Source of the DNA: Macrostomum lignano
Lineage: Eukaryota
Assembly: GCA_002269645.1 (NCBI GenBank)
Contig: NIVC01000930.1
Span: 124,001-188,000, forward strand
Length of the DNA stretch: 64,000 nucleotides
Direction: 5' to 3'
Position numbers and translations under genes: made by a program. Shown in pieces: positions 1 through 54,150 of the stretch. The notes below the pieces were generated by a model that was not told the origin of the DNA, made no database searches, and worked only from the letters and a program-made list of their open reading frames with translations. Every line of letters begins with the position of its first letter. The stretch's first letter is position 1.

Positions 1-115
1 GGCCCGTCTGAAAAATAGAAAGACGGAGGAAAGACGACTTTACGCGCTGCCTTCTTAGACCGCGAATCGTACGACAAACGTCGTACGAATCGTACCAAAG
101 TTTTTTGTGTGCTTC

Positions 116-2965
116 CTAATAATGATGGCCAATCCAGCTACCTGGGTGCGTTGGCACTGAGCAACACACTCTTATCCTACTCTGAGATTGATCTAGATTA
201 ATGGAAGTCTCACCATAAGATCGCTTGGCAATCCGTTTAACATAGGGGCCAGCCTTGACACAGGCCTGGCTACACTTCTCATCGGCACTAGCCTGACAGG
301 CGCTCAACTGATCAGCCTTGGTGTACGGCAGAACAGCCTCCGAGAACGTGTTCAAAAGTCTATGCCTAGAGGTTGAACACTGGAACAAGCTGCAAGCTTT
401 TACGGCGGCCAGTTGGCAAGCTCGAAGACGCAGCAACGCCTGCGAAGACGGCACCGAAAGTGACGGCAAGCGATCAACAAATAGCAGCTTGACGCTGACG
501 GACGCTGGCAAAGACGAGTCAGCGGTCAGGTTCAGCTGATCAGGATCTGTCAGCAGTGAAGTCAACAAAGTTAAACTGTGCGTAGCTAAGGTTGACGATG
601 CTTTCAACAGCTGTTGCTGTCTCAACAGCTGAGATGATTGTATGAGAAACACGCTGGCCGCTTCAGCCTCGTGTGGTGCCAGAGATGCCAGGCTGGCAAG
701 ACGATAAGTTCGAGTCACCAGCCAGTGACGCACCTCGAGCAGCATCTGGGGAGATTAAGATGCAGAATCAAAATGTTAGATTTAGTTAAATCAATAATTT
801 GCGCAATCTGGCAGTATCAACATCAACTACTGCCTCGCCTCAGTGCTGAGGCATTTCAGTACATTCTGCTGACTCCTGAGCACATACAAGCGCCAATATT
901 GTACACAGGCACACACTCTCACAGCGGTGTACAGCGGCCCTGACAATCTAATCATCAGACATGTACACTCTGTGCCTTGGGGGTTGGCCCTAATGGCTGT
1001 TAATTGCACAACCCCTGGCACAAGCCCCAAATAAATGTGACCGCGCACGGATATCCTCTGGCCCCAACATCAACCATTCTCACTGACAATTTCATCAATC
1101 ACAGTTTAATAACCTCCGAGAAAGTAATGCTCATCCGCTTCGAGCAAGAAACCCACCTGGTCAACACCGCCACCCTTGACCTTGGACAACCGAAACACAT
1201 TCGAATCGGCCGAGCCAGCAGTCGCACTGGCGGACAATTTCTTAGCAGCCGCGACGGGATCGCCGCGTCCAAATGCCACACCCAAAAGCGTGGGAGCTTT
1301 GACGCTGCCCAACGATCGATAGGAGTCGATTAGAGCAGCGGATGGCGAGGCCGCCTTCGACGCTTCAGCGAAGCCCCTCGGAGCGAGCACCTCCGGCGCC
1401 AGCTTAACATAAGCCTCGCCTAGCAGAAGCAACGGAGTGGAAGATATCAGACGAGAACGAAGGCTGGCCAAGAGATCGCACAGATAATTGTACTCGAAAT
1501 TCAACGCATCCAGAGCAGCAGTTGAAGAAGAAGAGTCTGTTGCATCAGTCTGGCCTAGTAGTAGGTGAGTTGGCCCAATTAAAAATGTCATTCGACCGCC
1601 ATCGCCCGCACCAGCAGCAACGTTTTCGCACAGCCGTCCATCAGCCAGTCTCTGATTTAGCCGGCCGACAACAAACTGCACTAATCGGCGATAGATGGCG
1701 CGAACCATGCCGGCCAGTGCGGCGTTGCACTCTTCGGCTGTGCGATTGCGCAACGCTTTTCTGTGACCATCGCGCAGGACTTCGTATCTGCGTAGTGCGT
1801 TTGTTGATTGAAAGGAGAGGATATACAAACGAGCAAGAGACTTAGTGTTTTTGTTTTCTAAACATTTAATACTTTTCTCCGAGGAAGAACAGATTGATAT
1901 GCAGACGTTACAACCTAGAGCATCCTATTCGGAGCCATGGACAAAGAATAATTGACCAAGAAACTAGATTTTAATTACCGCAACACACCTGACAGTGATC
2001 TCGCGCATAAGCGACTCCAATTCTAAGCCGAGCATTTGAGCGACGCGTTCCAAATTTTCGTGCCGTTCAAACTGGACGCATTTTTTCGGCTTGCGCGGAT
2101 CCGGAACCACGCGGACCAGACGTAGATGCAGGACGGCCGCGGCGCATCGATGAATAAAATCTAGATTCTCATCCGAGAATTCGAACAGTTCGGCAAGGCA
2201 TCGGGCTACATTGATTTGCTTGAGACGATCGTCCGACATCAGCTCCGCGTAGGCGGGAGGACAAGCCATGGACAAAGCAATCTCGCTATCGTCAAGGTAG
2301 TAAGCAGCTCTGACAGACTCAGTAGCGTTCTCCATCAGCGAGTAGAAAAAGCAAAACGCGGTTAAATTTTCAGCTTCCAAGTCGTCGCGACCAAGCAAGC
2401 CGTAGCCCATCAGCCAGAGAACATCGTACTTAATGCTAATCAAATCGCCGTTCTCGTTGAAGTCAGCGTGCAGCATTGTTACCGAATGGTTATCCAGCTC
2501 AACTCGATCACCTAGCTTTCGATAGACACAGGTGAACATGCGTACTAGGTCTAGGCTAGACTGAACTAGCGGACGAGCAGACAGCATCGGAGCGTCCTTA
2601 GCAACCATATGAACCAGCTGCTGCAAGGCATCGGAATCGTTTATGGCTATCAATAAGGGCCGCGTGCATAACAACAGATTCGGGTCCGACTTGCTGTACA
2701 ATTGGCTCTTAGCGCAGGTGTAAAAGTTCACTAGCGTAGGCGCGTTGCAGCACGGATACCAGGTGCAATTAGACGGTGTAGTTGCATCGAAGTCACCATC
2801 ATCAACGCTATCATCAGCTGGCTGGTCGCCTAGCAACAGAGACTCTCCGCACCATTTTGAACGAACGGCTTCATCGTCTGAAGCCAGCATTAAGTCGAGC
2901 AGCTGCTGTTCGGAGCGCCAATCGCCCAGTTCAAGGATATCCTTAGCCACTCTAGCAGTTGCCAT
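116..2965 (-). CDS. Highly divergent myosin-motor-like protein (probable pseudo-ATPase), multi-exon
   Basis: Exon 2965-1989 (donor GTGTGT) joins exon 1787-1157 in frame (ITVR|YEVL). A probable exon at ~1057-840 and a final exon at 745-116 follow (acceptor CCCCAG directly before 745). Segments follow myosin-head order: KDILELGDWRSEQQLLDLM (DDL..L..L.E..IL), AFCFFYSLM (HIFYQLL), IHRCAAAVLHL (IFRILAAILHLG), LERVAQMLGL, AIYRRLVQFVVGRLNQRL (ALYSRLF.WLV.RIN), MIRLSGPLYTAVRV (QLR.SG.LE.VRI). Splicing of the third exon is uncertain. Confidence 0.72.
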
Positions 2966-3661
2966 GCTGTTGGTTTGTTAGCTGTGCGTATATCTAAGCG
3001 CACCTGCGTGGTTTTTCTTCTTTGGCTTCTAATTTTCCAAGAATACTTGAAGGCTTGGTCTTTAGCCAAGGAACAAATGCATTTCTTTATATAAGCGTTC
3101 ATGGCCAGCAAGTCTACCTCGCACCTCTCTCTTGTCCACAAGGTTGCTTTAAAAAAGACAGATAAGAAATCGTAACTAAAAAAGTCTTGAAAACTTTCTG
3201 CCTAAAAGTTTGAGCAAGAGCAAATGAAATATTTGAAAAAATTTAGCCCGACGTTATCGTACCTAATAATAAAGCTAAGCATAAGCCTAAAACTAAACCT
3301 AAAATTTCGTTCTACACACTAAACTAAACACTAATGCCTACTTTAATTACGCACTCATTACTTGTTGAAAATGACAATAGGACGCAAATAAATTAACTTT
3401 AAGCATTAGTTCTCAACGCATCAAATAAAAAAAGTTGAAACATCCGTTATTATTGTATTTTTCAACACTTGAAATCTAGCAATAAACAGCATATTCTACA
3501 AACATTTGGCAGCAAACACCCAACAAGCATCGAACAGTACGCACGCAGTAACCTCCCATATCCAAGTAAACTACATACCGAATATAATAAAGGCCGCATC
3601 CAATCAAACAGTACTGGAACAATAAATGAAATAGATTATTTAATTAAAATTAAACTGCAAA

Positions 3662-6600
3662 TTAGAGCCCCTCCCCGGCAGGCACCTCAGTTTCAACGTT
3701 TGCTTCTTCATCGGTTGAGGAGGCAGCGTTAAGATGAGCATTAACCAGAGTGAGCAGCACCGGATACACCGCAGCGTATTCACGGACACCTCTGGCCTGA
3801 GCAGACTTGGCGTAGGCAACCAGGGTGCCCTGGATGAAGCGGAGCCGGTCAGACTCTTCGGGATGATCCAACAGCCAGGATACGTACCGGCTTACCTGGA
3901 GTTGGATTGTGGGTAGGGGATTAGAGATATGAGATAATATGGGATCTCTGTGACATACTTGTAGATAAGGGCGATTCTAGATGGGAGTAAAGGGCGGTTC
4001 TAGTGGATTAAAGGGCGGTTCTAGATGTGAGTAAAGGGCGGTTCTAGTGGGGATTAAAGGGCGATTCTAGTGGGGATTAAAGGGCGGTTCTAGATGGGAT
4101 TAAGGAGAACTCTAGATTCTAGATAGGATTAGGGAGAATTCTAGATTTTAGTGGGGATTAAAGGGCGATTCAAGGTTGGATTAAAGGGCGATTCTAGATT
4201 GGATTAAAGGGCGAAAAAAGATGGGATTAAAGGGCGATTATAGATGGTATCTCGGCGGATCTAGTGGGGATTAAAAGGCAATTCTAGCGATCCTGGATTG
4301 AGATTAAAGGGAAATTCTAGCAGCATATTCCCAGAGAAAATTCCCTCAAAACTACTCACCGACCAGCCAGCCGCAGTGTGAGGCGATTGCATATCAGCCG
4401 GGGCCCTAGAGAACAGGAGGTGAGCCACCAGGCTGGCGGGCAGGGCCTCCCCAATAGAGGGATTATTGGCCACGTGATGCGCCGATTGAAACAGCAGCGG
4501 CCTAAACGCCCTCAATCGTCTGTAGTGCTGGCCAAGGTCGGACATCCTCCGGCACAGAGGCGACAGGGCCAGCTCTAATTGGGCGCAATCGGCGGCCAAT
4601 CGGAGTCGGCCAGACTCGGCCAGAGGCCGCACCAGGCTGGCCAATAGGAGGAAGACTTCGATACACTGGCACGCGATTGGCTGCAGGCTGGAGTACAGGA
4701 AATCGCGCTGGCGATAGCTGGCCAAGTATAGCTGGGCTACGCGGCTGACAAAGTCCTGCTCGAAGTAAGGGGTCAACCGGTTTGAGAATAAGCCTTTTCT
4801 TGCCGACTGTCCTTCGTCATCCTAGTCTCTCCCACTCTACCCTGTCTCCCTCTCTACCCTGTCTCCCTCTCTACCCTGTCTCCCTCTCTACCCTGTCTCC
4901 CTCTCTACCCTGTCTCCCTCTCTACCCTGTCTCCCTCTCTACCCTGTCTCCCTCTCTACCCTGTCTCTCCCACTCTACCCTGTCTCTCCCACTCTACCCT
5001 GCCTCCCCACTCTACCCTGCCTCCCCACTCTACCCTGACTCCCACTCTACCCTGCCTCCCCACTCTACCCTGCCTCCCCACTCTACCCTGCCTCCCCACT
5101 CTACCCTGACTCCCACTCTACCCTGCCTCCCCACTCTACCCTGCCTCCCCACTCTACCCTGCCTCCACACTCTACCCTGCCTCCCCACTCTACCCTGCCT
5201 CCACACTCTACCCTGCCTCCCCACTCTACCCTGCCTCCCCACTCTACCCTGCCTCCCCACTCAACCCTGCCTCCCCACTCTACCCTGCCTCCCCACTCTA
5301 CCCTGCCTCCCCACTCTACCCTGCCTCCCCACTCTACCCTGCCTCCCCACTCTACCCTGCCTCCCCACTCTACCCTGCCTCCACACTCTACCCTGCCTCC
5401 CCACTCTACCCTGCCTCCCCACTCTACCCTGCCTCCCCACTCTACCCTGACTCCCACTCTACCCTGCCTCCCCACTCTACCCTGCCTCCCCACTTTACCC
5501 TGCTCCCCAACTCTACCTATGTCTAAAATCTACTCTCTCCCCAATTAATATTTGAGCTTTCAGACCAACAGACCTGCAATTCTCTCATATAGAGTGAGCA
5601 CTGCTGCTGCTGCTGTTGCTGCTGCGCTTGTTGCGAAGGCTGATCAAATCGTTCCTGATGCATTGTCAGAAGAATCGCTTCCAAACTATCTTGAACGGAA
5701 CCTAGCAACGGTTCCAAAGTTTGAGTCATTAATTGGCGCAATTCGGCCAAACTTCCGTCCAACAGGGAGACGGCGGTGTCCGGCAAATCAGCGGATAGCA
5801 GGGCCGATCGAAGATCCTGGCTCAGATGGCCAAGCATGTTTACTAGACTAGCGTTTGTCTGCAAGTTAAGTGTTGGGTAAACGGCTTGGGTAACTATGTA
5901 TTTTATTGGATAACAAAATACCTCGGCATCGTTTTAGTCGATAAAGTATAATCGGAAACAAAAAGTACAGATTTATAAGTCACCTGTTGCCCTTCAGTAG
6001 GCGGCCCCAGCACCTGACTCGCAGTGGCATCCGCCACTCTGGTAGCTTCAGCTTTGCGGCAGACAAACTGCACAGTTTTCACCACATTCTTGGCAATCTT
6101 CAGCAGCAGATCTTGGTCAACCTGGGTGAATGTCAACTCTGACGTCATGGCTTCGACTATTCGGCGAATTTCGATTTCACTGTTCAATGATTTCTGGCCG
6201 CCGCTGAACATGGCGTCCACTGGGTCGAACAGGCGGCTGAGGGATCTGGGAGAAAGTTTATCGAAGGGACATTTTTAGTGACTCGATGGCGCAAACAAAC
6301 AAAACTCTAAAACTAGGTGTCACAAACTCCCCCCTCACAGAATGTCAGGAAAAGACCAAGACAATAATGCGAACAAAAGACTTAAGTATGAGCCAATGTG
6401 TTCCTATGAATCTTGTCTTGTTGGTATCGTGACAATTAAGAGTCAATTTTCAACGGGTGCGACACTAAGTCACAATGGTGCAATCAGTGTGACAAACCCT
6501 GTCACAAGCGTGCAATCAGTGTGACACATCCTGTCACAATCGTGCAATCAGTGTAACAAACCCTGTCACAAGCGTGCAATCAGTGTGACACATCCTGTCA

Positions 6601-9600
6601 CAAGCGTGCAATCAGTGTGACACATCCTGTCACAAGCGTGCAATCAGTGTGACAAACCCTATCACAAGCGTGCAATCAGTGTGACACATCCTGTCACAAG
6701 CGTGCAATCAGTGTGACAAACCCTATCACAAGCGTGCAATCAGTGTGACAAACCCTGTCACAAGCGTGCAATCAGTGTGATACATCCTGTCACAAGCGTG
6801 CAATCAGTGTGACACATCCTGTCACAAGCGTGCAATCAGTGTGACACATCCTGTCACAAGCGTGCAATCAGTGTGACACATCCTGTCACAAGCGTGCAAT
6901 CAGTGTGACACATCCTGTCACAAGCGTGCAATCAGTGTGACACATCCTGTCACAAGCGTGCAATCAGTGTGACACATCCTGTCACAAGCGTGCAATCAGT
7001 GTGACAAACCCTGTCACAAGCGTGCAATCAGTGTGATACATCCTGTCCCAAGCGTGCAATGTTGCAGGTTTTCCAAGAGACCAAGAAACACCATTGACTC
7101 AATAAAAAACTAGTTAATGCATAAAGTAAAGAGCAAACCTGGACAGGTAGGCGGCCTCAAAGCTAGCCAGATGAGCCCGACCCAACGGCGGCAATTCTTC
7201 GTCAACAGCCGCTAATCTGGTTGACAAATCATTGGCCGATTTCAACAATCGCGGATATTCGCCTTCGAATGCGTGCTTTAAAAATGCGGACGCGCTGGCA
7301 GCGTTGGCCAGGCTGTCGCGCAGACAGTCGGACAACCAGTCGGCAAATCCGGCCGGGCTGATGGCTTCGGACGCGGCCGGTGACAGCAGGTCGGACAGGG
7401 GTCGCTGAGTGTTTGGGTCGCGTTTTTTAGCCAAAATGCGACGCAGACTGGCCAGAAACTGGGCGCCAGAAATGGCCTCCTCGTTGAGGGCGTCCAGGCC
7501 GGACCAGAGGGCCTGGGAGTAGGCGGCCGACTGGCCCGCTGGCAGGTTGGCGCGGCCGGGCGGGCCTCCGCCGCCACCGGAGCCGCTGCGGGTTGCGAGA
7601 TTGGGTTGTAGGGGGGGGGGGGGTGAGATCAGCTACCGTGGAGAGATTCAACTATATGAGAATGCATGAGATTTCAATACAAGGGTGATATTTGGTTATA
7701 AAGGGATGAGATTCTGTTATAAGAAGACGAGATTCTGTCATAAGGGGATGAGATTCTGTTACAGGGAGATGAGACTCTAAGGGGATGGGGTTCTGTTATA
7801 AGGGGATGAGTTTCGGTTATAAGGGGATATTCTGTTACAAGGAGATGAGACTCTGATATAAGGGGGTGAGATTCAGTTAAAAGAGAGTGAGATTCTGATA
7901 TAGGGGAGTGAGATTCTGATATAAGGGAGTGAGATTCTGTCATAAGGGGATGAGATTCTGTTATAAGGGGTGAGATTCTGTTAAAAGGGGTGAGGTTCTG
8001 ATATAAGGGGTGAGGTTCTGATATAAGGGAGTGAGATTCTGTTATAAGGGGGTGAGATTCTGTTATAAGGGAGTGAGATTCTGTTATAAGGGGGTGAGAT
8101 TCTGTTATAAGGGAGTGAGATTCTGTTATAAGGGGGTGAGATTCTGTTATAAGGGAGTGAGATTCTGTTATAAGGGGTGAGATTCAGTTATAAGGGGTGA
8201 GATTCTGTTATAAGGGGTGAGATTCTGTTAAAAGGGGTGAAGTTCTGATATGAAGGATAAGTATCTGTTAAAAGTTGCGCCACGAGGCAGATTTGGTTTC
8301 AAGGATGGTAAGGTTGAAAATTATAGGTCAGAAAAATCCCTCTAACTACTTGCTAACCTTGCTTCTCACCTTCCATAAGCAGCCTGCCCGGACCCGCTCA
8401 CAAACGGAGTCTTCTGCATGAGCGAAGACATGTCCAGAGCCGAACGGATGCGGGTGCGCAGGTCGGATCTGACCCGGCCGGCCAGGTCAACAATGCAATC
8501 GTCCAGCCGGCCAAGGCAGAATACGGCGTGTAGGCAGGTCGCCAGTTGAGGATGCGGAGCGCCGGACGCAGCGACCGAGCCAACCTGAAATCGTTTTTAG
8601 ACAGCCACTGAACGTAAATGCCAGATTAACCTAGCAGCGGAAAAAGTAATAGTTTTTTACCCTAGCAACGGGAGACATTATCTCTGCAGTTAAATCTCAC
8701 CCCCTCATAACCGAATCTCACCCCTCATAACCGAATCTCACCCCCCTTATTAACAACCGAATCTCACCCCTCATAACCGAATCTCACCCTTCATAGCCGA
8801 ATCTCACCCCTCATAACCGAATCTCACCTCCCTCATAACCGAATCTCACCCCTCATAACCGAATCTAACCCCCCTTATTAATAACCGAATCTCATCCCCT
8901 TATAACAGAATCTCACCCCTCATAACCGAATCTCACCCCCTCATAACCGAATCTCACCACTCATAACCCAATCTCCGCCCTAAACAGAATCTCACCCCTT
9001 ATAACAGAATCCCACCCCTTAACAGAATCTCACCCCCTCATGACCAAATCTTACCCCATAATTATTGAATCTCACCCCTCATAACCGAATCTCGTATACT
9101 CATAACTGAATGTCACCACCCTTATTAATCTCACACCATATGATTAAAAAATTACTGCCTAATTTACCCTAGCAACGGGAGACATGGTTGCTTGTTTACC
9201 CTTGCGACTGGAAAATCATTGATTATGTATCCTAGCAACAGGAAATATATACTGATTACCCTAGCAACGCGAATGAGATTGTTTGTTCATTTACCCTGGC
9301 CACACAATTGAAGCTTTCTGTTTACATTAGCAACAGCAACTCACTGCGCTTGAAGAGCCGATTCCGCGAGCATCTGCCAGCAGGGCGGTGGCACGCGTCT
9401 CCGCCGCCTCGCGCCAACGGGCAAAGCGCCGATGCTCCCTCTCTAGCGCGTGCACTCCGCGCCAATCCAAGCCGGAGAATTGGTGCCCCAGATCGCCCAG
9501 AGTCTGCGCCACTTTGCCCAGCTGATCCTCCGGCAAGGTGGCAGCCTCTTCAACCCCGGCCGCCGGCTGCGGCGGCAGCTTCTTGGCCAGAGCGAAAATT

Positions 9601-10845
9601 CGACCCGACCGGCGCAGGAAATCGCAGGCCGATTGAACCCGGCGCAGATGGAGAACCCGCTGCTCAAGCCTGGCGTACGGCTCCCCGATCCTGGCTCGAA
9701 TCTTTTTTAATCCCTGCAGCAGGGCGTCTGTTCGAGACTGGACTACGGAGAGCACGGATTCCAATGTGTCAATGCCGCTGGCTCGGGACAGAAGGTCTTT
9801 GTGATGACGGACCACGTGACGCTCGATGTCGCTTTCGAGCCTGCTCAATGAGTAGGGACAGGCTCTTTCACTCTCACTGAAGCTTCCCATACCCTCAGTG
9901 AAGCTCTTTCACTCTCCCCGAAGCTCTCGATACTCTCCCTGAAGCTTCATTACTCTCCCTGAGCTCCATTACTCTCACTGAAGCTCCCCATACTCTCACT
10001 GAAGCTCCCCATACTCTCACTGAAGCTCCCCATACTCTCCCTGAAGCTCCCCATACTCTCACTGAAGCTCCCCATACTCTCCCTGAAGCTCCCCATACTC
10101 TCACTGAAGCTCCCCATACTCTCACTGAAGCTCCCCATACTCTCCCTGAAGCTCCTCATACCCTCATTGAAACTCACTACTCATTTCAAAGATTTTCTAC
10201 TCTCCCTGAAGTTCCAAAAATCTTCCTGAAGCCCTTCAATCATCCTGAAGCCCTTCAATCATCCTGAAGCCCTTCAATCATCCTGAAGCCCTTCAATCAT
10301 CCTGAAGCCCTTCAATCATCCTGAAGCCCTTCAATCATCCTGAAGCCCTTCAATCATCCTGAAGCCCTTCAATCATCCTGAAGCCCTTCAATCATCCTGA
10401 AGCCCTTCAATCATCCTGAAGCCCTTCAATCATCCTGAAGCCCTTCAATCATCCTGAAGCCCTTCAATCATCCTGAAGCCCTTCAATCATCCTGAAGCCC
10501 TTCAATCATCCTAAAGCCCTTCAATCATCCTGAAGCCCTTCAATCATCCTGAAGCCATCATTCTTCTTGAATCCCTTTTACTTTCCTTGAATCCAAGTTT
10601 CCCTTAGTCCAGTACCCATAAATAATACTTCTTCTTGTACTCTACTATATTAAATGAAATAATCAGACTATTTTTGTTAGTAACAATAAAACTAATCAAG
10701 CAACTCACTTTCCAATGCAGGCGTCAATCTTTTCAATAACCTCGCTAACAACTTGGGTTTGCAGCACATTGATAGCGAATGATTTCTCATCGAAACTGTC
10801 ACCTTCAAACACTGCCAAAAAATTATCTGCTTCTTCGCCGTTCAT
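3662..10845 (-). CDS. COG5: Conserved oligomeric Golgi complex subunit 5
   Basis: Phase-consistent GT-AG exons: 10845-10709, 9840-9345, 8584-8370, 7585-7139, 6245-5984, 5858-5574, 4755-4360, 3895-3662 (2472 nt, ~823 aa). COG5 motifs recognised: HHKDLLSRASGIDTLESVL, LAKKRDP, FEAAYLSRSLSRLFDP, MQSPHTAAGWS, and the C-terminal RFIQGTLVAY...YAAVYPVLL. Confidence 0.93.
3975..4330. repeat. Degenerate ~20-22 bp minisatellite (GGGATTAAAGGGCGATTCTAGAT-like), COG5 last intron
   Basis: Repeated gggattaaagggcg(g/a)ttctag units. Confidence 0.8.
4825..5520. repeat. 17/18-bp minisatellite (CTCTACCCTGCCTCCCCA), COG5 intron
   Basis: Direct reading; gives the spurious LPTLPC-repeat ORF. Confidence 0.95.
6470..7060. 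repeat. 32-bp minisatellite (TGTGACACATCCTGTCACAAGCGTGCAATCAG), COG5 intron
   Basis: Period 32 (catcctgt at 6783 and 6815); each unit contains the inverted repeat TGTGACA-N5-TGTCACA. Confidence 0.95.
7690..8260. repeat. 19-20 bp minisatellite (GGGGTGAGATTCTGTTATAA), COG5 intron
   Basis: Direct reading. Confidence 0.92.
8690..9130. repeat. 19-20 bp minisatellite (ATAAC(C/A)GAATCTCACCCC), reverse complement of the 7690-8260 array
   Basis: TTATAACAGAATCTCACCCC is the reverse complement of GGGGTGAGATTCTGTTATAA. Confidence 0.9.
9860..10200. repeat. 21-bp minisatellite (TACTCTCACTGAAGCTCCCCA), COG5 intron 1
   Basis: Direct reading. Confidence 0.9.
10222..10556. repeat. 19-bp near-perfect minisatellite (CCTGAAGCCCTTCAATCAT), ~17 copies
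   Basis: Period 19 (10225, 10244, ...). Confidence 0.95.
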
Positions 10846-12039
10846 TTGTATTATTAGTATTGATCAGAATTAGCAATTTATGAGTAGTTTATCAATTACA
10901 CTCATTTGACTCAGATATTTTCAACAGAAGTAAAAATAATAAAAAACATGTTATTTTATGTTATTTACTCTCATCTGAAAGTTTACATGGTACTGGCAGC
11001 AAACTACTACTCTTAGTAACCAAACAAAAAAGTTACAAAATTTATGGGATTTCATTTATAATTCTTTAAGCTTATTTAATCTTATATACTCAGTAAGTAT
11101 ATGTAGCCTTCTTAGAAATATTGATAGTTTATTAAATAAATTTTTTTGCTACTTTAGGAACTAAAAACTCAAATTTTGAATTGGTATTGATATTGAATAT
11201 CCCTACAACCAATTTGAGCAGCTTCACTTTATAGAGCAAAGCATCTTGAATCTGGCAAAAAAAGCCTGAAACAAAGTAGATCCTTTAGAAATGAGACTAT
11301 ATTGCTGCATAAAAATATTTGTTAGTTCCCTTGTATAGACTACTTGGCTATGAATCTAAATATACTTCTATCTCAGAAAGGGAAACTTGACAAACAATTC
11401 TAATCAAGTGGCACATTTGTTAAAATTGATAGTTTAAAGAAACTAAATAGCAAATTTAAATTTAGCCAGAGTCAAATTCATTATGCTACTTCTCAATCCA
11501 AGCCATACATAACCTCTAAAACTAAACTATACTAGCTATAACTTATTTATGATTGAAAATATGAATTCATTTGCAACTCAAAAAAAACAAATAAAAATAT
11601 CTTATTCATTGTTACAAAAATTGTCAAAAACTTGCTTTAACCCACTATATAGAAATTAAACATTTGAAGATTCAAATTGGTTTTTTTGCATTTTATAACA
11701 AATTCACCAAAACAATTTGTATGTTACACATAGTAGAGACATAAAATATAGGTCCTAGCATAGCTAAGCATATGAGTAACAAATCTACTAAATTCAAGAC
11801 CCAAATAAATGTTCCAAAAAGATGACCAGTACAGCTAAAATATCTATAAGTATATATCTTAGCCAATTGCCATACTTGAAAATTTATTCTAATAAGACCT
11901 TTAACCATTTTGCTAAAATCTATTATATATTTACCTTTTCAAAGCCAACTCATTTTTCAAAATTCAAAATTCAAATCCAAATATGTTAACATGTTTCCAA
12001 ATGTAAGCAAAAAGTAAAAAGTAAATGGCAAGAGATGTA

Positions 12040-14150
12040 TTCAGTAAATGTTTAACAAAATTGTCTATTTAGTATGCAAGACAGTGTACATTTTTAGACT
12101 TTTTTATGCATGTCTCTGCTTTAAAAAGACACATCAAACACACACAAAGACACTATACAAGCTGAGATATTCCCTAGCAACGGTTGTTATGACATTTCCC
12201 AATATACCAAATACTGTATATGGTCATTTTTAGAGGAGCCGCTGCATTGTCGCACTTTGCTCTTTCTGAATGAAAATTGCACAGCTGCTTTATGCATGTC
12301 TCTACTTTAAAAATATACCCAGACACACTCAAAGACATCTTACAAGCTGAGATATTCCCTGGCAACAGTTGTTACAATGTTTCCCAATATACCAAATACC
12401 ATATTTGGTCATTTTTTGAGGAGCCATTACATTGTGGCACTTTGCTCTTTCTGAATGAACAGAATGAATGCACAGCTGCTTCACACATGTCTCTGCTTTA
12501 AAAAGACACCCCAGACACACTACAAAGATGTTTCACAAGCTGAGATATTCTTTAGCAATAGTTGTTACGACATTTTCTAGATATACCGAATGCTGTTTGA
12601 TGTTGCTGTTTGAATCATATAACCTTTTTTTCAGAAGCTGTGCTCTTTCTGCATGAAAATTGCACTGCTACTTTACACATGCCTTGCTATAAAAAGACAC
12701 ATTAAAGACCAACAAAGATGCTTCACAAGCTAAGATAATCTTTAGCAATGGTTATTACTATGTTTTCTAAATACTTAGTACACTGAATGCCTGTCTTTGG
12801 CATTTGCACATTCTCCAGTTGTTCGGTAGGCGATTTTGCTTACCCTTGTCAGAACTGTCAATTGCGAATTGCTTCGAGACTGGGTCAATTTTGCCCAACA
12901 ACCTGGCCCAACAATAACAAATTTTTTTGTTTGTGACAGAAAGTTCTAAACTCACAAAGGACACAGACATACATCTACATATATGTATAAAATCTTTCAC
13001 TCTGTGGTCTTTCCGACTGGAATGGGAATGCAATGTTTGAGCAGAAAGAAAGTGTCTATGGCCCAATTTTGACCCATCTGACTGAAACGGAGAGTGACAA
13101 ATATCTTCACTGTCTTGAAGAAGTTAAATACTACCTAAAATTTTTACATATGCTCTCAATAATCTTACCTTAATAATAATAATAGTAGTACAGTATATAA
13201 TCATAGTAGTATTGGTAATAATAACAGGACAGTAACATTAATAGTAACAATATTAATATTAATAATAATAAAATAATAATAAATCCAAAAAGCATTTATT
13301 ATTATTATAAAAAAATAATATTAATTTTAATAGTATTCAGTGTACTTAGTATTTAGAAAACATCGTAACAACCATTGCTAAAGAATATCTCAGCTTGTGA
13401 AACATATTTGTGGTGTGTCTGGGGTGTCTTTTTAAAGAAGAGACATGCGTAAAGCAGCTGTGCAATTTTTATTCAGAAAGAGCAAAGTGTAACAATGTAG
13501 TTGGCTTCCCAAAAAATGACCATATATGGTATTTGGTAATATTGGGAAATGTTGTAACAACCATTGCTAAGGAATATCTCAGCTTGGGCCTTTTCATATT
13601 ACCAATTCTAGAACCAGAATCGGTTCGGAATTCCAAGAAAAACAGCAGTATAACTATTAAACTCTGTTAATATTTGACTGCCTTAACAACCTAACTTAGC
13701 AAAATTTTTCACTTTCTTCTTGGCGATTGTCATTCAATAATAAAAACTTTATAGCATGTATTTCCCTCTAGTTATGGAGACAAAAAGTTATACTTCACAA
13801 ATTGGTTCTGGTTCTGGAACCAGAGCAAGCAATATGAAAAGGCCCCTTGTGAAGTATTTTTGTGTATGTCTGGGATGTATTTTTAAGGTAGAGACATGCA
13901 TAAAGCAGCTGTGCAATTTTTATTCAGAAAGAGCAAAGTGCGACAATGTAGCAGCTCCTCAAAAATGACCATATATGGTATTCAGTATATTGGGAAACTT
14001 TATAACAACCATTGCTAGGGAATATCTCAGCTTCTAAAGCATCTTTGTGTGTGTCTGATGTGTCTTTTTAAAATAGACACATGCGTAAAAAGTTAAAAAT
14101 GTACACTATCTTGCATACTAAATAGACAATTTTGTTAACCATTTACTGAA
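12040..14150. mobile_element. Foldback-like element: long inverted arms built from ~185-bp subrepeats
   Basis: The left arm (~12040-12789) is the reverse complement of the right arm (~13333-14150). Outer ends: ttcagtaaatgtttaacaaaattgtctatttagtatgcaag / cttgcatactaaatagacaattttgttaaccatttactgaa. The spacer is ~540 bp and AT-rich. No transposase or clear TSD seen. Confidence 0.78.
13586..13845. mobile_element. 260-bp MITE (PIF/Harbinger/Tourist-like) nested in the foldback right arm
   Basis: Perfect 15-bp TIR GGGCCTTTTCATATT / AATATGAAAAGGCCC, a subterminal inverted motif (ttctagaaccagaa / ttctggttctggaa), and a 3-bp duplication CTT interrupting the host unit ctcagctt|gtgaa. Confidence 0.8.
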
Positions 14151-15115
14151 CAATTTCTAAATGTCTATCTGAATGTCTATTGGGAAACCAATACATTGGC
14201 AAGAGTAACAATAACACTTTTAAGTTATGATTAGGCCCAATACTTAAACAATGATTACCTTAAAATATTTTTGCAACTTTAGGTTTAATGCCCTAAAGGT
14301 CCCAAAGTAAATAACTTTATTTAATAAAACTTTTTAACTATATGTTACTTTAAAACTTGACAATTATAAAATGAAAAAAAAACACTAAATTTTACCTTTT
14401 TAATTCTTAATTTATTAGCCTAATTAATTTCCTATTTCAAAAGTTTTATTTCTTAAATGTTTGCATTTGTTTTGGTTTCTTGATTTTTTTAGATTTGGAA
14501 GCACATTAAAAATATTTGGAAAAAGTTTTTGAATCCAAAACATTTATATTTTTAAAAATAAAACATTTTTTTCATTTTAGTCATAGATTTCAAATTCAAA
14601 TCCAAATATTGGATCCATCACTATTTATTGAATATTAATACTAGTAAGGAGTCTAATAAAAACTTATTTTTTGGAGCAGTTAGAAAGTGGTCTGATAACT
14701 GATATATTATGGTTAAAATATAATTGGTCTAAGATATGATAATGAGCTTAGGCCTTTATTTATTGAAAAAGGAAAAAATCATTTTTAAATCATGTAGGCC
14801 TACACAAGGCATCAGGCTTTGGCAAGCACTTGGTAATTTCTTAGCAGGGTCTAACATAAAAATTTTTTCACCAAAAAACCCTTTCTTAGAAAATGATTAT
14901 ATACAAATGTTGTCTGAGGCCTACACTACAACTCGAATCTACATGTATTATGGCAAGGCCAAGGCCCAAGGCTAGGCCTAATTTATGGTCAAATCAAGTC
15001 AGTCTTCCAGATTTTCCATCTTTAATCAGAATTCCTTGGCCATGCCGTGACACACACAAACTGTTCAATCAGTTTACTTGCTGTAAAAGAGATAAAGAAG
15101 TTAAACATTTGGGTT

Positions 15116-15218
15116 ATCCTGAAGATTCCCGCGTTTAATTATAACCCCCACCCCCACCACCCTTGAATAGAGGGCGAAATAATTCCGTAAAATAATTAAA
15201 CGCGGGAATCTTCAGGAT
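15116..15218. repeat. Perfect 27-bp inverted repeat around a ~49-bp spacer (mini-MITE or hairpin)
   Basis: ATCCTGAAGATTCCCGCGTTTAATTAT (15116-15142) versus ATAATTAAACGCGGGAATCTTCAGGAT (15192-15218). Confidence 0.85.
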
Positions 15219-15779
15219 TGCCAACATTTGTAGGGCCTACTATACATGACATGACTTAACAATTGGGAACTAGGAATTATTAGGGCCATTAAAATACAAG
15301 TCATATCGGTTATTTAAGATTGTCAGTCACGTGATTCACGACCATTTGAAAGAGTCAAAGTTTGCCGGAGGAAGGTTGTACACCTTGAAGCCGACTAAAC
15401 TGAAACGGTTACGTACGGCAAGGAATCGCGAAAATGTCCTGGAAATTTTCATACATTTAAAAGTTTACACAGGTATAACAAATTTAAATGCCTAAAATAT
15501 TATTGCTGCTATGATTAGCTACTAAAAGCACGTATCTGAATCTGCGTCCTAAAGAAAGTCAAAATTTGACTAATAATAATTTTATTTTATTGGTAAACAA
15601 ATTACCACACGTTCTTAGCAGTCCACCAGAAGGCCCAACGATTTCTTAGAAATGCGTTGGATGAGAAAAATTCAAAAATTTAAAACAGGGTGCAGCTCAT
15701 CTGGGCGATGTGGAGTCGATCTATAACCAACGTGGTTAACTTTTGTTTGACATTGCTTTAATAGCAATGTAACGATATA

Positions 15780-16020
15780 TACCGATTTTTTTCGGCAGCA
15801 ATTGCGTAAGCTGAAGCCGCGTAGCGGCTGAAGCTTAGTAGAGCAATTGCTGCCGAAAAAAATCGGTACATGTCATTATTGTACCCTTTTGACTTCCCCT
15901 GTCTATGGCCCAGACATGTCGCGGCTACGCGGCTTCAGCTTACGCAATTGCTGCCGAAAAAAATCGGTACATGTCATTATTGTACCCTTTTGACTTCCCC
16001 TATCTATGGCCCAGACATGT
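15780..16020. repeat. Interlocked inverted and direct repeat cassette
   Basis: 46-bp perfect inverted repeat 15780-15825 / 15924-15969; 77-bp direct repeat 15843-15919 / 15944-16020 (one mismatch). Confidence 0.88.
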
Positions 16021-38037: not shown

Positions 38038-50752
<12,715 letters not shown>

Positions 50753-51605: not shown

Positions 51606-53415
51606 GGGATAATGAATCTGGATTTAGGGATAATGAATCTGGATATAGGGATAATGAATCTGGATGTAAGGATAATGAATCTGGATATAGGGATAATGAA
51701 TCTGGATATAGGGATAATGAATCTGGATATAGGGATAATGAATCTGGATATAGGGATAATGAATCTGGATATAGGGATAATGAATCTGGATGTAGGGATA
51801 ATGAATCTGGATATAGGGATAATGAATCTGGATATAGGGATAATGAATCTGGATTTAGGGATAATGAATCTGGATATAGGGATAATGAATCTGGATGTAA
51901 GGATAATGAATCTGGATATAGGGATAATGAATCTGGATGTAGGGATAATGAATCTGGATATAGGGATAATGAATCTTGATGTAGGGATAATGAATCTGGA
52001 TATAGGGATAATGAATCTGGATATAGGGATAATGAATCTGGATTTAGGGATAATGAATCTGGATATAGGGATAATGAATCTGGATGTAAGGATAATGAAT
52101 CTGGATATAGGGATAATGAATCTGGATGTAGGGATAATGAATCTGGATATAGGGATAATGAATCTTGATATAGGGATAATGAATCTGGATATAGGGATAA
52201 TGAATCTGGATATAGGGATAATGAATCTGGATATAGGGATACTGAATCTGGATATAGGGATACTGAATCTGGATATAGGGATAATGAATCTGGATTTAGA
52301 GATAATGAATCTGGATTTAGAGATAATTAATCTGGATATAGGGATAATGAATCTGGATATAGGGATAATTAATCTGGATATAGGGATAATGAATCTGGAT
52401 ATAGGGATACTGAATCTGGATATAGGGATACTGAATCTGGATTTAGAGATAATGAATCTGGATTTAGAGATAATTAATCTGGATATAGGGATAATGAATC
52501 TGGATATAGGGATAATGAATCTGGATATAGGGATAATGAATCTGGATTTAGAGATAATTAATCTGGATATAGGGATAATGAATCTGGATATAGGGATACT
52601 GAATCTGGATATAGGGATAATGAACCTGGATATAGGGATAATGAATCTGGATATAGGGATACTGAATCTGGATTTAGAGATAATGAATCTGGATATAGGG
52701 ATAATGAATCTGGATATAGGGATACTGAATCTGGATATAGGGATACTGAATCTGGATATAGGGATACTGAATCTGGATACAGGGATAATGAATCTGGATT
52801 TAGAGATAATGAATCTGGATATAGGGATACTGAATCTGGATATAGGGATACTGAATCTGGATTTAGAGATAATGAATCTGGATATAGGGATACTGAATCT
52901 GGATATAGGGATACTGAATCTGGATATAGGGATAATGAATCTGGATATAGGAATACTGAATCTGGATATAGGGATACTGAATCTGGATATAGGGATACTG
53001 AATCAGGATATAGGGATACCGAATCTTGATATAGGGATAATGAATCTGGATATAGGGATAATGAATCTGGATATAGGGATACTGAATCTGGATATAGGGA
53101 TAATGAATCTGGATATAGGAATAATGAATCTGGATATAGGAATAATGAATCTGGATATAGGGATACTGAATCTGGATATAGGGATACTGAATCAGGATAT
53201 AGGGATACCGAATCTTGATATAGGGATAATGAATCTGGATATAGGAATAATGAATCTGGATATAGGAATAATGAATCTGGATATAGGGATACTGAATCTG
53301 GATATAGGGATAATGAATCTGGATATAGGGATAATGAATCTGGATATAGGAATAATGAATCTGGATATAGGGATACTGAATCTGGATATAGGGATACTGA
53401 ATCTGGATATAGGGA
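51606..53415. repeat. 21-bp minisatellite (ATAATGAATCTGGATATAGGG), ~85 copies
   Basis: Direct reading; source of the 609-aa MNLDIGI ORF. Confidence 0.97.
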
Positions 53416-54150
53416 CAATGAATAAACTTAAATTAAATTGAATAGGATCAAGTTAAATTGAATAAAAGCTGGCAAAGTCACCCGCAAAATTGGGGCAGGC
53501 GGTTTTGATTTGCTCAATTTTGACCAAACAGCCAGCGCTAAAGAAACTCCAACCTGAGCACGCCAAACTCCTCCACAAAGCATCCAATTAACAATGCAGT
53601 CAATCAGCCAGCTTCTGACAGGGTTATCAACAAACTGTGGAGCAAAAACTGATTTGGTATTTTTTTTAAGTCAAGAACCGGCAAAGTCAGTTCAAGGGCT
53701 GCATAGCAACCAAACGGTCCAGACGAACTGAATCCTGCAAGCCGCCTGGTGACGCAAAGCAGCGCCCTTATCAACCAGATAAAATATAATAATAAACTCG
53801 CAATATCCAAAAATTCAACACAGCGGCTTCAATATTGATGATTAGCAAATTATCCAACTTCCATTTTTGGTCACCGTTCTGACTTGGCGACTCCTACAGA
53901 TTTGAGATTAGACCGTGGGTCCGAAAGCTAAAACAAGCCCCTACTCAGACTCGACAAACTCAGTTAATTATTGATGATCCTACCGAGATGCGTGCAGCTC
54001 AACAACACTCGACAAAGTTTGCCTGTTAGGTAGATTTGGAGCATGAGCTTCTCGGGCATAAAAGCAAAGATGGATTCGCACCGACTCTGCCGGTTGCCAG
54101 CCAGAGAGTTGAACTCATCCATCAGCACCAGTTAATATTCTCGCTAAACT

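What the first reader, a model, noticed from the sequence alone, without database searches (positions are those of the whole stretch)
116..2965. Intact myosin-head-like gene with all nucleotide-binding motifs erased (candidate pseudo-myosin)
Seen: open, spliceable reading frames whose helical segments follow the myosin motor domain from its N-terminal DDL..L motif to a converter/IQ-like tail. Where the P-loop GESGAGKT should be it reads NLLLCTRPLLIAIND. Switch I (NNNSSRFG) reads ELDNHSVTM and switch II (DIFGFE) reads roughly FLIGPTHL. Established: these three motifs are required for myosin ATPase activity; class-18 and Drosophila class-20 myosins are known motor-impaired cases but keep recognisable motifs. 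Inference: a compact ~800-aa scaffold or actin-binding pseudoenzyme more degenerate than those, kept open by selection rather than decaying.
Basis: partly seen in the sequence, partly recalled or inferred. Interest (0 to 1): 0.8.

Follow-up and report, generated by a model that had tools for sequence, protein, structure and literature searches.

The report
Flatworm myosin-derived gene without ATP site
This is a real, spliced, annotated gene of the flatworm Macrostomum lignano whose protein descends from a myosin motor but has no ATP-binding loop at all, so it is most likely a "dead motor" kept for some non-motor role. Only about 175 of its 1114 residues can still be shown to be myosin-like.

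Summary
The gene is real. It lies on the minus strand: exon 1 at 2965-1989, exon 2 at 1787-1157, exon 3 at 745-214, and 7 nt of exon 4 at 7-1. The other exons lie off the window. It is GenBank PAA74664.1 (BOX15_Mlig034240g3, Macrostomum lignano), 1114 aa in 8 exons, not ~800 aa.

Pfam Myosin_head scores 44.8 bits, above the curated cut-off of 33.3 (E 7e-12), but only residues 203-376 match. The rest of the head C-terminal to that shows weak collinear similarity (z about 4). The N-terminal 200 aa, where the P-loop and switch I would sit, cannot be told from shuffled sequence.

No Walker A motif, and no GK[ST], occurs anywhere in the protein. No switch I motif occurs either. The only switch-II-like string is DALNFE, where Asn replaces the catalytic Gly.

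A second homeologous copy keeps the same 8-exon reading frame. Exons differ by 0.87% with one in-frame indel. Short introns differ by 3.5% with 7 indels. dN/dS is 0.47, about the same as the neighbouring COG5 gene.

An exhaustive search of 1.84 billion proteins found no orthologue. AlphaFold models were of low confidence.

Several details need correcting, and its function is untested.

The parts
1989..2965 (-). Exon 1: start ATG at 2965-2963, codons 1-325 plus 2 nt. It holds the orphan N-terminal 200 aa and the start of the recognisable myosin segment.
   Evidence: ORF. Donor CAG|GTGTGT at 1988. Translation identical to P0002. Exon model recovered from both homeologous loci.
2642..2665 (-). 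Residues 101-108 (TRPLLIAI), the position where the P-loop GESGAGKT falls in alignments with myosins. No Gly, Lys or Thr/Ser of the motif is retained.
   Evidence: MAFFT alignments A3 and A4. No Walker A or GK[ST] anywhere in the protein. The placement is not statistically supported.
2471..2497 (-). Residues 157-165 (LDNHSVTML), the candidate switch I position by spacing. It sits 45 aa upstream of AFCFFY, which corresponds to the NFHIFY motif, and is followed by HADFNENGDLIS, which resembles RINFDASGYIAG. The SSR motif is absent.
   Evidence: Direct reading plus the anchor from the phmmer alignment to myosin VI. MAFFT instead places switch I 8 residues downstream. No SSR or SRFG anywhere.
1788..1988 (-). 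Intron 1 (GT..AG).
   Evidence: It diverges 4.0% from the homeolog, with indels.
1157..1787 (-). Exon 2: completes codon 326 (1 nt) and holds codons 327-536. It contains the end of the recognisable myosin segment, the switch II region and a relay-helix-like region.
   Evidence: The junction ...GGGVDQ|MLLEVRH... is the same in P0001 and P0002.
1637..2359 (-). Coding span for residues 203-376, interrupted by intron 1. This is the only segment with statistically significant myosin-head similarity. It covers part of the upper 50-kDa subdomain, from the NFHIFY helix through the cardiomyopathy-loop hairpin to the long helix ending RLNQRL.
   Evidence: Pfam PF00063: 44.8 bits, E 7e-12, profile positions 190-358. 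PDB myosin VI, E 6e-4. hhalign score 85.5 against shuffles of 16+-3; z = 33.7 in constrained global mode. AlphaFold pLDDT 50-84.
1562..1585 (-). FLIG resembles the FIG(I/V) strand that precedes switch II.
   Evidence: Direct reading only. Not chosen by MAFFT or hhalign.
1493..1513 (-). Residues 418-424 (LDALNFE), the alternative and alignment-preferred counterpart of switch II LDIAGFE. Asp, Phe and Glu are kept; the catalytic Gly is Asn.
   Evidence: hhalign global alignment. MAFFT invariant columns L418, D419, F423, E424. Regex D...FE.
746..1156 (-). Intron 2.
   Evidence: It diverges 3.6% from the homeolog.
214..745 (-). Exon 3: codons 537-713 plus 1 nt. It covers the lower-50K, SH-helix and converter-like region, with only weak collinear similarity to myosin. 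For example, LEVRHWLVTRTY resembles FSILHYAGKVDY, and LLTSLLTD resembles FVRCIIPN.
   Evidence: Acceptor cccag|ATG at 746 and donor TATG|GTGAGA at 213. Trimmed MAFFT alignment. Constrained global hhalign z = 3.8.
8..213 (-). Intron 3. The open frame that runs on to the stop codon at 116 is read-through of this intron.
   Evidence: It diverges 5.7% from the homeolog, with indels.
1..7 (-). First 7 nt of exon 4 (ACGGGCC, completing ...Y|DGP...). Exons 4-8, coding residues 714-1114, lie beyond the window start.
   Evidence: Exon 4 starts at L002 position 5959, which is window position 7. Sequence.

Best explanation
The window holds the first three exons of a transcribed, protein-coding gene of Macrostomum lignano (BOX15_Mlig034240g3). 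Its 1114-aa product descends from a myosin heavy chain but has lost its nucleotide-binding site entirely.

Shown:
- A 175-residue stretch of the upper 50-kDa subdomain is still clearly myosin.
- The remainder of the head lies collinear with a myosin head at about the right spacing. An IQ-like motif follows at residues 748-758, then a ~330-aa tail with no known domain.
- The protein has no P-loop, no switch I and no intact switch II.
- The reading frame has been under purifying constraint since the recent genome duplication.

Inferred:
- The protein cannot bind or hydrolyse ATP the way a myosin does, so it cannot be a motor.
- It most likely works as a nucleotide-independent binding or scaffold protein.
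- It may still contact actin through the retained upper-50K/cardiomyopathy-loop surface, and may carry a calmodulin-like light chain on its IQ-like helix.
- It appears restricted to the Macrostomum lineage and has evolved fast.
For: Identity and gene model:
- Identical to PAA74664.1 over 713 aa. The window equals NIVC01000930.1.
- The 8-exon model was recovered in two homeologous loci.
- The assembly's annotation is built from RNA-seq transcripts (PMC5730564).

Myosin descent:
- Pfam Myosin_head 44.8 bits against a cut-off of 33.3, E 7e-12.
- All top PDB sequence hits are myosins.
- hhalign z = 33.7 for residues 200-373 and z = 3.8 for residues 374-728, both against the corresponding parts of a myosin profile.
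- Residues 713-792 align with the converter end and IQ region: score 25.6 against shuffles of 13.9+-1.9.
- Residue 203 aligns with profile position 190, so the N-terminal length fits a head without the SH3-like domain.

Loss of the active site:
- No [AG]xxxxGK[ST], GK[ST], SSR or D..G.E anywhere in 1114 aa.
- GESGAGKT aligns to TRPLLIAI.

Selection:
- Exons differ at 29 of 3342 sites (0.87%), with one in-frame indel. Introns 1-4 differ at 42 of 1209 sites (3.5%), with 7 indel events.
- Simulated neutral change predicts 2.8-4.4 premature stops, with P(none) = 0.05-0.013.
- dN/dS is 0.47, comparable to 0.55 for the neighbouring COG5.
- CDS divergence sits at the genome-wide CDS average of 1.1%, against 2.2% overall (PMC10733133).
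- The ORF remains intact although the sequence has diverged from every other myosin to below 20% identity. That implies long-term maintenance.
Against: - The N-terminal 200 aa show no measurable similarity to the myosin N-terminal region (z = -0.6). Their descent from the nucleotide-binding part is assumed, not shown.
- AlphaFold gave no confident fold outside residues 204-375: pLDDT 29.7 with 2 sequences, 42.1 with 12 myosins in the alignment.
- Foldseek TM-scores are only ~0.2. The second model is also circular, because its alignment contained myosins.
- No orthologue was found in any other species among 1.84 billion representative proteins. Long-term dN/dS therefore cannot be measured.
- The dN/dS between homeologs rests on 29 changes (p = 0.04).
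- I found no expression data specific to this gene in the supplements I searched.
- Actin binding and light-chain binding are pure inference. The Pfam IQ score of 12 bits is below its cut-off of 20.3.
Confidence: 0.7

Rival explanations
1. Partial capture. Only a fragment of a myosin head (about residues 200-380, perhaps also the converter/IQ end) was incorporated into a lineage-specific gene. The N-terminal 200 aa, and much of residues 380-700, are unrelated or newly arisen sequence. On this reading the P-loop was never 'erased' in place.
For: The N-terminal segment scores like shuffled sequence, both in local mode and in position-constrained global mode. Segments 381-560 and 561-720 are not significant on their own. 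AlphaFold gives no confidence there, even with myosins in the alignment.
Against: - The significant segment spans the exon 1/exon 2 junction. Pfam profile position 190 falls at residue 203, so the N-terminal length is what a complete head would have.
- Residues 374-728 taken as a whole are collinear with the matching part of the myosin profile (z = 3.8; 389-792 aligned to 418-829).
- Many short collinear matches occur at the right spacing: KDILEL/EDMAEL, LLCT before the P-loop position, HW..RTY/HYAG.V.Y, L..QL.K...TL, and G.K.VF followed by an IQ-like motif.
Confidence: 0.15
2. A transcribed relic with no function of its own. It would be a decaying myosin gene carried along in a multi-gene transcription unit (COG5 - this gene - ACOX), with a reading frame that merely has not been broken yet.
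For: dN/dS of 0.47 is only weakly below 1 (p = 0.04). No orthologues were found. The gene index 'g3' and the tight same-strand spacing suggest co-transcription with neighbours. An independent annotation fuses its last exon to ACOX (P0003).
Against: - Exons are four times less diverged than introns. They carry one in-frame indel where about 19 indel events would be expected at the intron rate, and no stops where about 3-4 would be expected.
- The pattern matches the conserved neighbour COG5 and the genome-wide CDS average.
- A 3.3-kb frame across 8 exons has stayed open through near-saturating divergence from other myosins.
Confidence: 0.1
3. The protein is still an active nucleotide-dependent motor that uses an unrecognisably altered active site.
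For: None beyond the partial switch-II-like DALNFE.
Against: No Walker A, no GK[ST], no SSR and no DxxG anywhere in the protein. By established knowledge, these elements are required for nucleotide binding and hydrolysis in all myosins, kinesins and G proteins.
Confidence: 0.02

Closest known systems
Class XVIII myosins (myosin-18A/18B)
   Same: They have a myosin-head fold, no measurable ATPase and retained actin binding, and they serve as structural or scaffold components (PMC7900500).
   Different: Myosin-18 differs from active myosins at only a few key residues and remains readily recognisable over the whole head. It carries PDZ/KE and coiled-coil domains. Here the P-loop and switch I are entirely absent, three quarters of the head is unrecognisable by sequence, and Pfam finds no PDZ or other tail domain.
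Drosophila class XX myosin Dachs (from my own knowledge, not checked here)
   Same: It is reported to be a motor-impaired myosin that acts as an actin-binding adaptor rather than a transporter.
   Different: Dachs keeps recognisable nucleotide-binding motifs and a full-length Pfam head match. No special similarity to it was seen in this work.
Kinesin-like pseudo-motors Vik1/Cik1 of yeast (from my own knowledge; an analogy in the sister motor family)
   Same: They have a motor-homology domain that lacks a nucleotide-binding site, is retained by selection and is used as a filament-binding partner.
   Different: A different superfamily branch (kinesin fold, microtubules). They work as heterodimers through a coiled coil. 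No long coiled coil or partner is evident for this protein.
Ordinary myosins (classes II, III, VI, I, XV), the best sequence hits
   Same: 28-34% identity over residues ~200-380.
   Different: All of them carry GESGAGKT, NxNSSRFGK and DIxGFE. No class affinity can be assigned, and the tail is an orphan.

Membership tests
Myosin head superfamily (Pfam PF00063) | Profile match at or above the curated gathering score | tested here: met
   44.8 bits against 33.3, E 7e-12, for the spliced product; 43.0 bits for the homeolog. The match covers only profile positions 190-358 of 679.
Myosin head superfamily (Pfam PF00063) | Homology along the whole head (N-terminal nucleotide-binding part, lower 50K, converter) | tested here: inconclusive
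   N-terminal 8-199: z = -0.6 (no signal). Residues 374-728: z = 3.8. Residues 700-800: score 25.6 against shuffles of 13.9+-1.9. Spacing fits a complete head.
Functional myosin motor | P-loop / Walker A GESGAGKT | tested here: not met
   No [AG]xxxxGK[ST] or GK[ST] anywhere in 1114 aa of either copy. The aligned position reads TRPLLIAI.
Functional myosin motor | Switch I NxNSSRFGK | tested here: not met
   No SSR, SRFG or N.NSSR. The candidate positions read LDNHSVTML or HADFNENGD.
Functional myosin motor | Switch II DIxGFE with its catalytic Gly | tested here: not met
   No D..GFE or D..G.E. The only related string is DALNFE at 419-424, with Asn in place of Gly. The position is ambiguous against FLIGPTHL.
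Functional myosin motor | Myosin head three-dimensional fold | tested here: inconclusive
   AlphaFold mean pLDDT 29.7 and 42.1. Only residues 204-375 exceed 50. The Foldseek top 50 are all myosins, but at TM ~0.2 with ~170-200 residues superposed. The alignment contained myosins, so the test is circular.
Functional myosin motor | Neck with an IQ light-chain-binding motif after the converter | tested here: inconclusive
   LQSHVRRLAAR at 748-758 fits [ILV]Q...R....[RK]. Pfam IQ scores 12 bits, E 0.19, below the cut-off of 20.3. The motif is encoded off the window.
Functional myosin motor | Actin binding and actin-activated ATPase | not testable with these tools
   Requires purified protein.
Class XVIII myosin | Whole head recognisable with a few active-site substitutions; PDZ/KE N-terminus; coiled-coil tail | tested here: not met
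   Pfam finds only Myosin_head (partial) and a weak IQ; no PDZ. There is no long helix in the tail beyond the neck helix 739-780 (low-confidence model).
Pseudogene (non-functional relic) | Premature stops or frameshifts, exon divergence equal to intron divergence, dN/dS about 1 | tested here: not met
   No stops and one in-frame indel. Exons 0.87% against introns 3.5% (Fisher p 7e-57 over all aligned introns 1-5 and 7, including the indel-rich introns 5 and 7). dN/dS 0.47, p = 0.04. Same pattern as COG5.

The most novel reading that the evidence does not exclude
A myosin-fold pseudoenzyme that has lost its nucleotide pocket completely, yet is retained as a nucleotide-independent actin-binding or regulatory module. 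One possibility is a static tether; another is a partner that modulates an active myosin, which would be the myosin counterpart of the kinesin pseudo-motor Vik1. It would be more degenerate than any characterised dead myosin (classes XVIII and XX).
Probability: 0.25. Interest if true: 0.75.

Novelty: new variant of a known kind. Interest (0 to 1): 0.5.

Why it matters
Motor-dead myosins are known, but they keep almost the whole active site. A selectively maintained descendant with no P-loop at all would show how far the myosin head can be repurposed as a pure binding scaffold. It would also give a natural 'nucleotide-free' head for studying actin binding uncoupled from the ATPase cycle.

M. 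lignano has transgenesis and RNAi, so function is directly testable. On the annotation side, UniProt's automatic name 'Myosin motor domain-containing protein' overstates what this protein can do.

Several limits apply. The gene is so far seen in one species only, the fold is unconfirmed, and no expression pattern or phenotype is known.

Tried and rejected
1. An alternative splice model that kept VGFLLEADEHYFLGG (donor at 1114) or added a 1057-840 exon. The frames do not join, and both annotated copies use donor 1156 and acceptor 746.
2. My first guess that SIKYDVLWLMGY corresponds to NYHIFYQL. The phmmer and Pfam alignments place AFCFFYSL there instead.
3. hhalign's global placement of the P-loop on 'CGES' at residues 39-42. 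It had zero confidence and the wrong spacing. That string more likely corresponds to YSGLF..VNP.
4. AlphaFold with only the two homeologs as alignment. pLDDT was 29.7, which is unusable.
5. AlphaFold with 12 trimmed myosins in the alignment. pLDDT was 42, informative only for residues 204-375, and circular.
6. Orthologue search. An exhaustive phmmer run over 1.84 billion representatives returned only the protein's own cluster, a chimeric tail-ACOX prediction and five ordinary myosins. The word-indexed search returned only the homeolog.
7. Expression look-ups for Mlig034240 and Mlig023546 in full text and in the supplements of four M. lignano papers. Nothing was found.
8. Rfam and tRNA scans of the window. 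No hits.
9. Literature search for an already described P-loop-less myosin. Nothing relevant was found.
Full report
**What is at the coordinates**

The minus strand of window 1-2965 carries three long ORFs: 2965-1964, 1828-1106 and 745-116. Reading the reverse strand shows canonical splice sites: CAG|GTGTGT at 1989/1988, tacgcag|A at 1788/1787, CAG|GTGGGT at 1157/1156, ccccag|ATG at 746/745 and TATG|GTGAGA at 214/213. Joining 2965-1989, 1787-1157 and 745-214 gives an open frame of 713 codons.

A protein search identified the organism and the gene. The product is 98% identical to P0001 (PAA82636.1, BOX15_Mlig023546g3). It is 100% identical over all 713 residues to P0002 (PAA74664.1, BOX15_Mlig034240g3; UniProt A0A267FN79, 'Myosin motor domain-containing protein'). 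Both are from Macrostomum lignano. The window is base-for-base identical to contig NIVC01000930.1 (L002).

I recovered the full gene model in both loci by demanding exact translation. It has 8 exons and encodes 1114 aa (1113 aa in the homeolog). Exon 4 starts at window position 7, so the window holds exons 1-3 and 7 nt of exon 4. The stretch 213-116 is intron read-through.

The annotation of this assembly was built from genome-guided RNA-seq transcript assemblies (StringTie and TACO). Gene boundaries were set from spliced-leader and poly(A) data, and ORFs came from TransDecoder (PMC5730564). The gene models, named Mlig034240.g3-style, therefore imply transcripts with these junctions. This is an inference. 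I found no gene-specific expression table.

**Is it myosin-like, and over what length?**

Pfam Myosin_head (PF00063) matches the spliced product at 44.8 bits, above the gathering score of 33.3, with E 7e-12. The match covers only residues 203-376, aligned to profile positions 190-358 of 679 (43.0 bits for the homeolog). The separate exons score 23.4 and 12.1 bits and are collinear.

phmmer against PDB sequences returns only myosins (VI, Ic, II, XV) for the same stretch, best E 6e-4. That alignment places AFCFFYSL on NYHIFYRL and AIYRRLVQFVVGRLNQ on TVYSHLFDHVVNRVNQ.

An exhaustive phmmer search of 1.84 billion representative proteins found only seven hits at E <= 1e-3. These were the protein itself, a chimeric prediction that fuses its last exon to the downstream ACOX gene, and five ordinary myosins. 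The myosins match residues ~200-380 at 28-34% identity. There is no orthologue and no closer paralogue.

I then built a profile from 28 complete myosin heads found and compared segments with hhalign against shuffled controls.

| Segment (residues) | Mode | Score | Shuffles | z |
|---|---|---|---|---|
| 196-380 | local | 85.5 | 16+-3 | - |
| 700-800 | local | 25.6 | 13.9+-1.9, max 20.3 | - |
| 381-800 | local | 26.3 | 15.7+-2.6 | - |
| 1-195, 381-560, 561-720, tail | local | within shuffle range | - | - |
| 200-373 | global, matching sub-profile | 78.1 | 3.5+-2.2 | 33.7 |
| 374-728 | global, matching sub-profile | 8.2 | 2.1+-1.6 | 3.8 |
| 8-199 | global, matching sub-profile | 1.8 | 3.2+-2.2 | -0.6 |

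The 700-800 match is collinear with the end of the converter and the IQ region. The 381-800 match aligns residues 389-792 to profile positions 418-829.

So about 175 residues of the upper 50-kDa subdomain are demonstrably myosin. This stretch includes the cardiomyopathy-loop hairpin and the long helix before switch II. The C-terminal half of the head is weakly but collinearly myosin-like. The N-terminal 200 residues are unrecognisable.

The spacing still fits a whole head. Profile position 190 falls at residue 203. The G-KLVF string, which resembles G-SKIFFR, sits at residues ~720-725. It is followed by an IQ-like LQSHVRRLAAR at 748-758.

**The nucleotide-binding motifs**

Independently of any alignment, neither copy contains [AG]xxxxGK[ST], GK[ST], SSR, SRFG, D..GFE or D..G.E anywhere in 1114 residues.

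- *P-loop.* MAFFT alignments with 53 full-length myosins and with 12 trimmed ones both put SILCTGESGAGKTENTK opposite LLLCTRPLLIAINDSDA.
The following hairpin also fits: HADFNENGDLIS against RINFDASGYIAG. MAFFT shifts it by 8 residues. Either way the Ser-Ser-Arg is gone.
- *Switch II.* hhalign and MAFFT prefer LDALNFE (418-424) opposite LDIAGFE, which keeps Asp, Phe and Glu but replaces the catalytic Gly with Asn.

These placements are not statistically supported in the N-terminal part, so they are inferences. The absence of any P-loop is a direct observation. A myosin-type ATPase is therefore excluded with high confidence. This rests on established knowledge of P-loop NTPases.

**Structure prediction**

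With only the two homeologs as alignment, AlphaFold2 gave mean pLDDT 29.7. With 12 trimmed myosin heads in the alignment it gave 42.1. Values above 50 were seen essentially only for residues 204-375, with short stretches around 500-555 and at 761-800.

Foldseek against the PDB returned myosins only, at TM ~0.2 with ~170-200 residues superposed at 3-4 Å. Because the alignment contained myosins, this is circular. It adds nothing beyond the sequence result. The full-head fold remains unproven.

**Is the frame maintained by selection?**

M. lignano is a recent polyploid with three homeologous subgenomes. Paralogous blocks differ by 2.2% overall and by 1.1% in coding sequence (PMC10733133). The window and locus L001 are collinear at ~96% identity over more than 12 kb.

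| Measure | Exons | Short introns 1-4 |
|---|---|---|
| Differences between the two copies | 29 of 3342 sites (0.87%) | 42 of 1209 sites (3.5%) |
| Indels | one 3-nt in-frame indel | 7 indel events |

Introns 5 and 7 carry large indels. At the intron rate about 19 indel events would be expected in the exons. Random substitution at 2.2-3.5% predicts 2.8-4.4 premature stops, with P(none) = 0.054-0.013.

Nei-Gojobori dN/dS is 0.47 (17 non-synonymous and 12 synonymous changes; one-sided binomial p = 0.04). As a calibrator, ORF blocks of the neighbouring conserved gene COG5 give pN/pS = 0.55 with the same pS of about 0.012. The pseudo-myosin therefore behaves like an ordinary coding gene of this genome since the duplication.

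There is a second, independent argument. The sequence has diverged from every other myosin to below 20% identity outside the core, yet it keeps a 3.3-kb frame across eight exons. That is hard to reconcile with neutral decay.

**Context**

COG5 lies about 700 nt upstream on the same strand, with its stop codon at window 3662. Acyl-CoA oxidase lies about 1 kb downstream. The order is the same in both homeologous loci. The gene index 'g3' and an independent annotation that fuses the last exon to ACOX (P0003) suggest a multi-gene, trans-spliced transcription unit. This is an inference.

**Interpretation**

The best-supported reading is a lineage-restricted, selectively maintained, myosin-derived pseudoenzyme (confidence about 0.7). 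It has no nucleotide pocket, and therefore no motor cycle.

Its likely mode of action is nucleotide-independent binding. It may bind actin through the one surface that has stayed recognisable (the upper 50K and cardiomyopathy loop). It may also carry a light chain on the IQ-like helix, with an orphan 330-residue tail for partners. All of this is untested.

The rivals are:
- capture of only a myosin fragment into a novel gene (0.15);
- a co-transcribed relic without function (0.1);
- an exotic active ATPase (0.02).

**Comparison with what is known, and novelty**

Myosin-18A/B lack ATPase activity but differ from active myosins at only a few key residues, and they still bind actin (PMC7900500). 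From my own knowledge, Drosophila Dachs (class XX) is similar. The nearest analogue in degree of degeneration is the kinesin-like Vik1, whose motor-homology domain has no nucleotide site (also from my own knowledge).

This protein passes the Pfam family threshold, so it is a myosin-head homologue. It fails every active-site criterion and cannot be assigned to a class. I rate it a new variant of a known kind.

The record is already public under an automatic name, and nothing has been published on it as far as my searches reach. I score interest at 0.5. It would be a clean and testable case of extreme motor-domain repurposing in a tractable animal. Against that, it is known from a single species, its fold is unconfirmed and there are no functional data.

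Noticed in passing
window 3662-10845, minus strand: The upstream neighbour is the COG5 gene (conserved oligomeric Golgi subunit 5; Pfam COG5_N and COG5_C in the public gene call). Its exon-like ORFs lie at 10705-10845, 9327-9890, 7114-7434, 5903-6220, 5523-5864, 4261-4776 and 3662-3871. Against the homeologous locus they give pN/pS of about 0.55 and pS of about 0.012.
   Followed up: partly
window 3967-10556: The COG5 introns are packed with long tandem arrays. Examples: an 18-mer x38.6 at 4831-5517 (95% matches), a 32-mer x18.5 at 6469-7060, a 21/42-mer at 7681-8274, a 20-mer at 8693-9093, a 21-mer at 9870-10175 and a 19-mer x17.8 at 10219-10556 (99% matches). They create long spurious ORFs such as 4782-5450.
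   Followed up: no
window 1-3661 plus L002/L001 flanks: COG5, the pseudo-myosin and acyl-CoA oxidase lie on one strand, separated by ~0.7 kb and ~1 kb, in both homeologous loci. The locus tag index is 'g3'. An independent annotation (UniProt A0A1I8FI66, P0003) fuses the last pseudo-myosin exon to ACOX. This suggests a polycistronic, trans-spliced transcription unit.
   Followed up: partly
L002 10404-11228 and L001 16925-17824 (off the window; intron 6 of the gene): A gene call of 274/299 aa on the opposite strand is nested in the ~4.9-kb intron 6 of both homeologs. It has no Pfam hit on record and may be a mobile-element remnant.
   Followed up: no
window 10001-16000: An AT-rich block (GC 0.335, against ~0.50 elsewhere) that includes a 185-bp tandem repeat at 12103-12591.
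   Followed up: no
window 42001-46000 and 52001-54000: Segments with strong positive GC skew (+0.35 to +0.40), and an opposite skew at 10-12 kb and 32-34 kb (-0.37). They are probably strand-biased repeats. No Rfam family or tRNA was found anywhere in the window.
   Followed up: no
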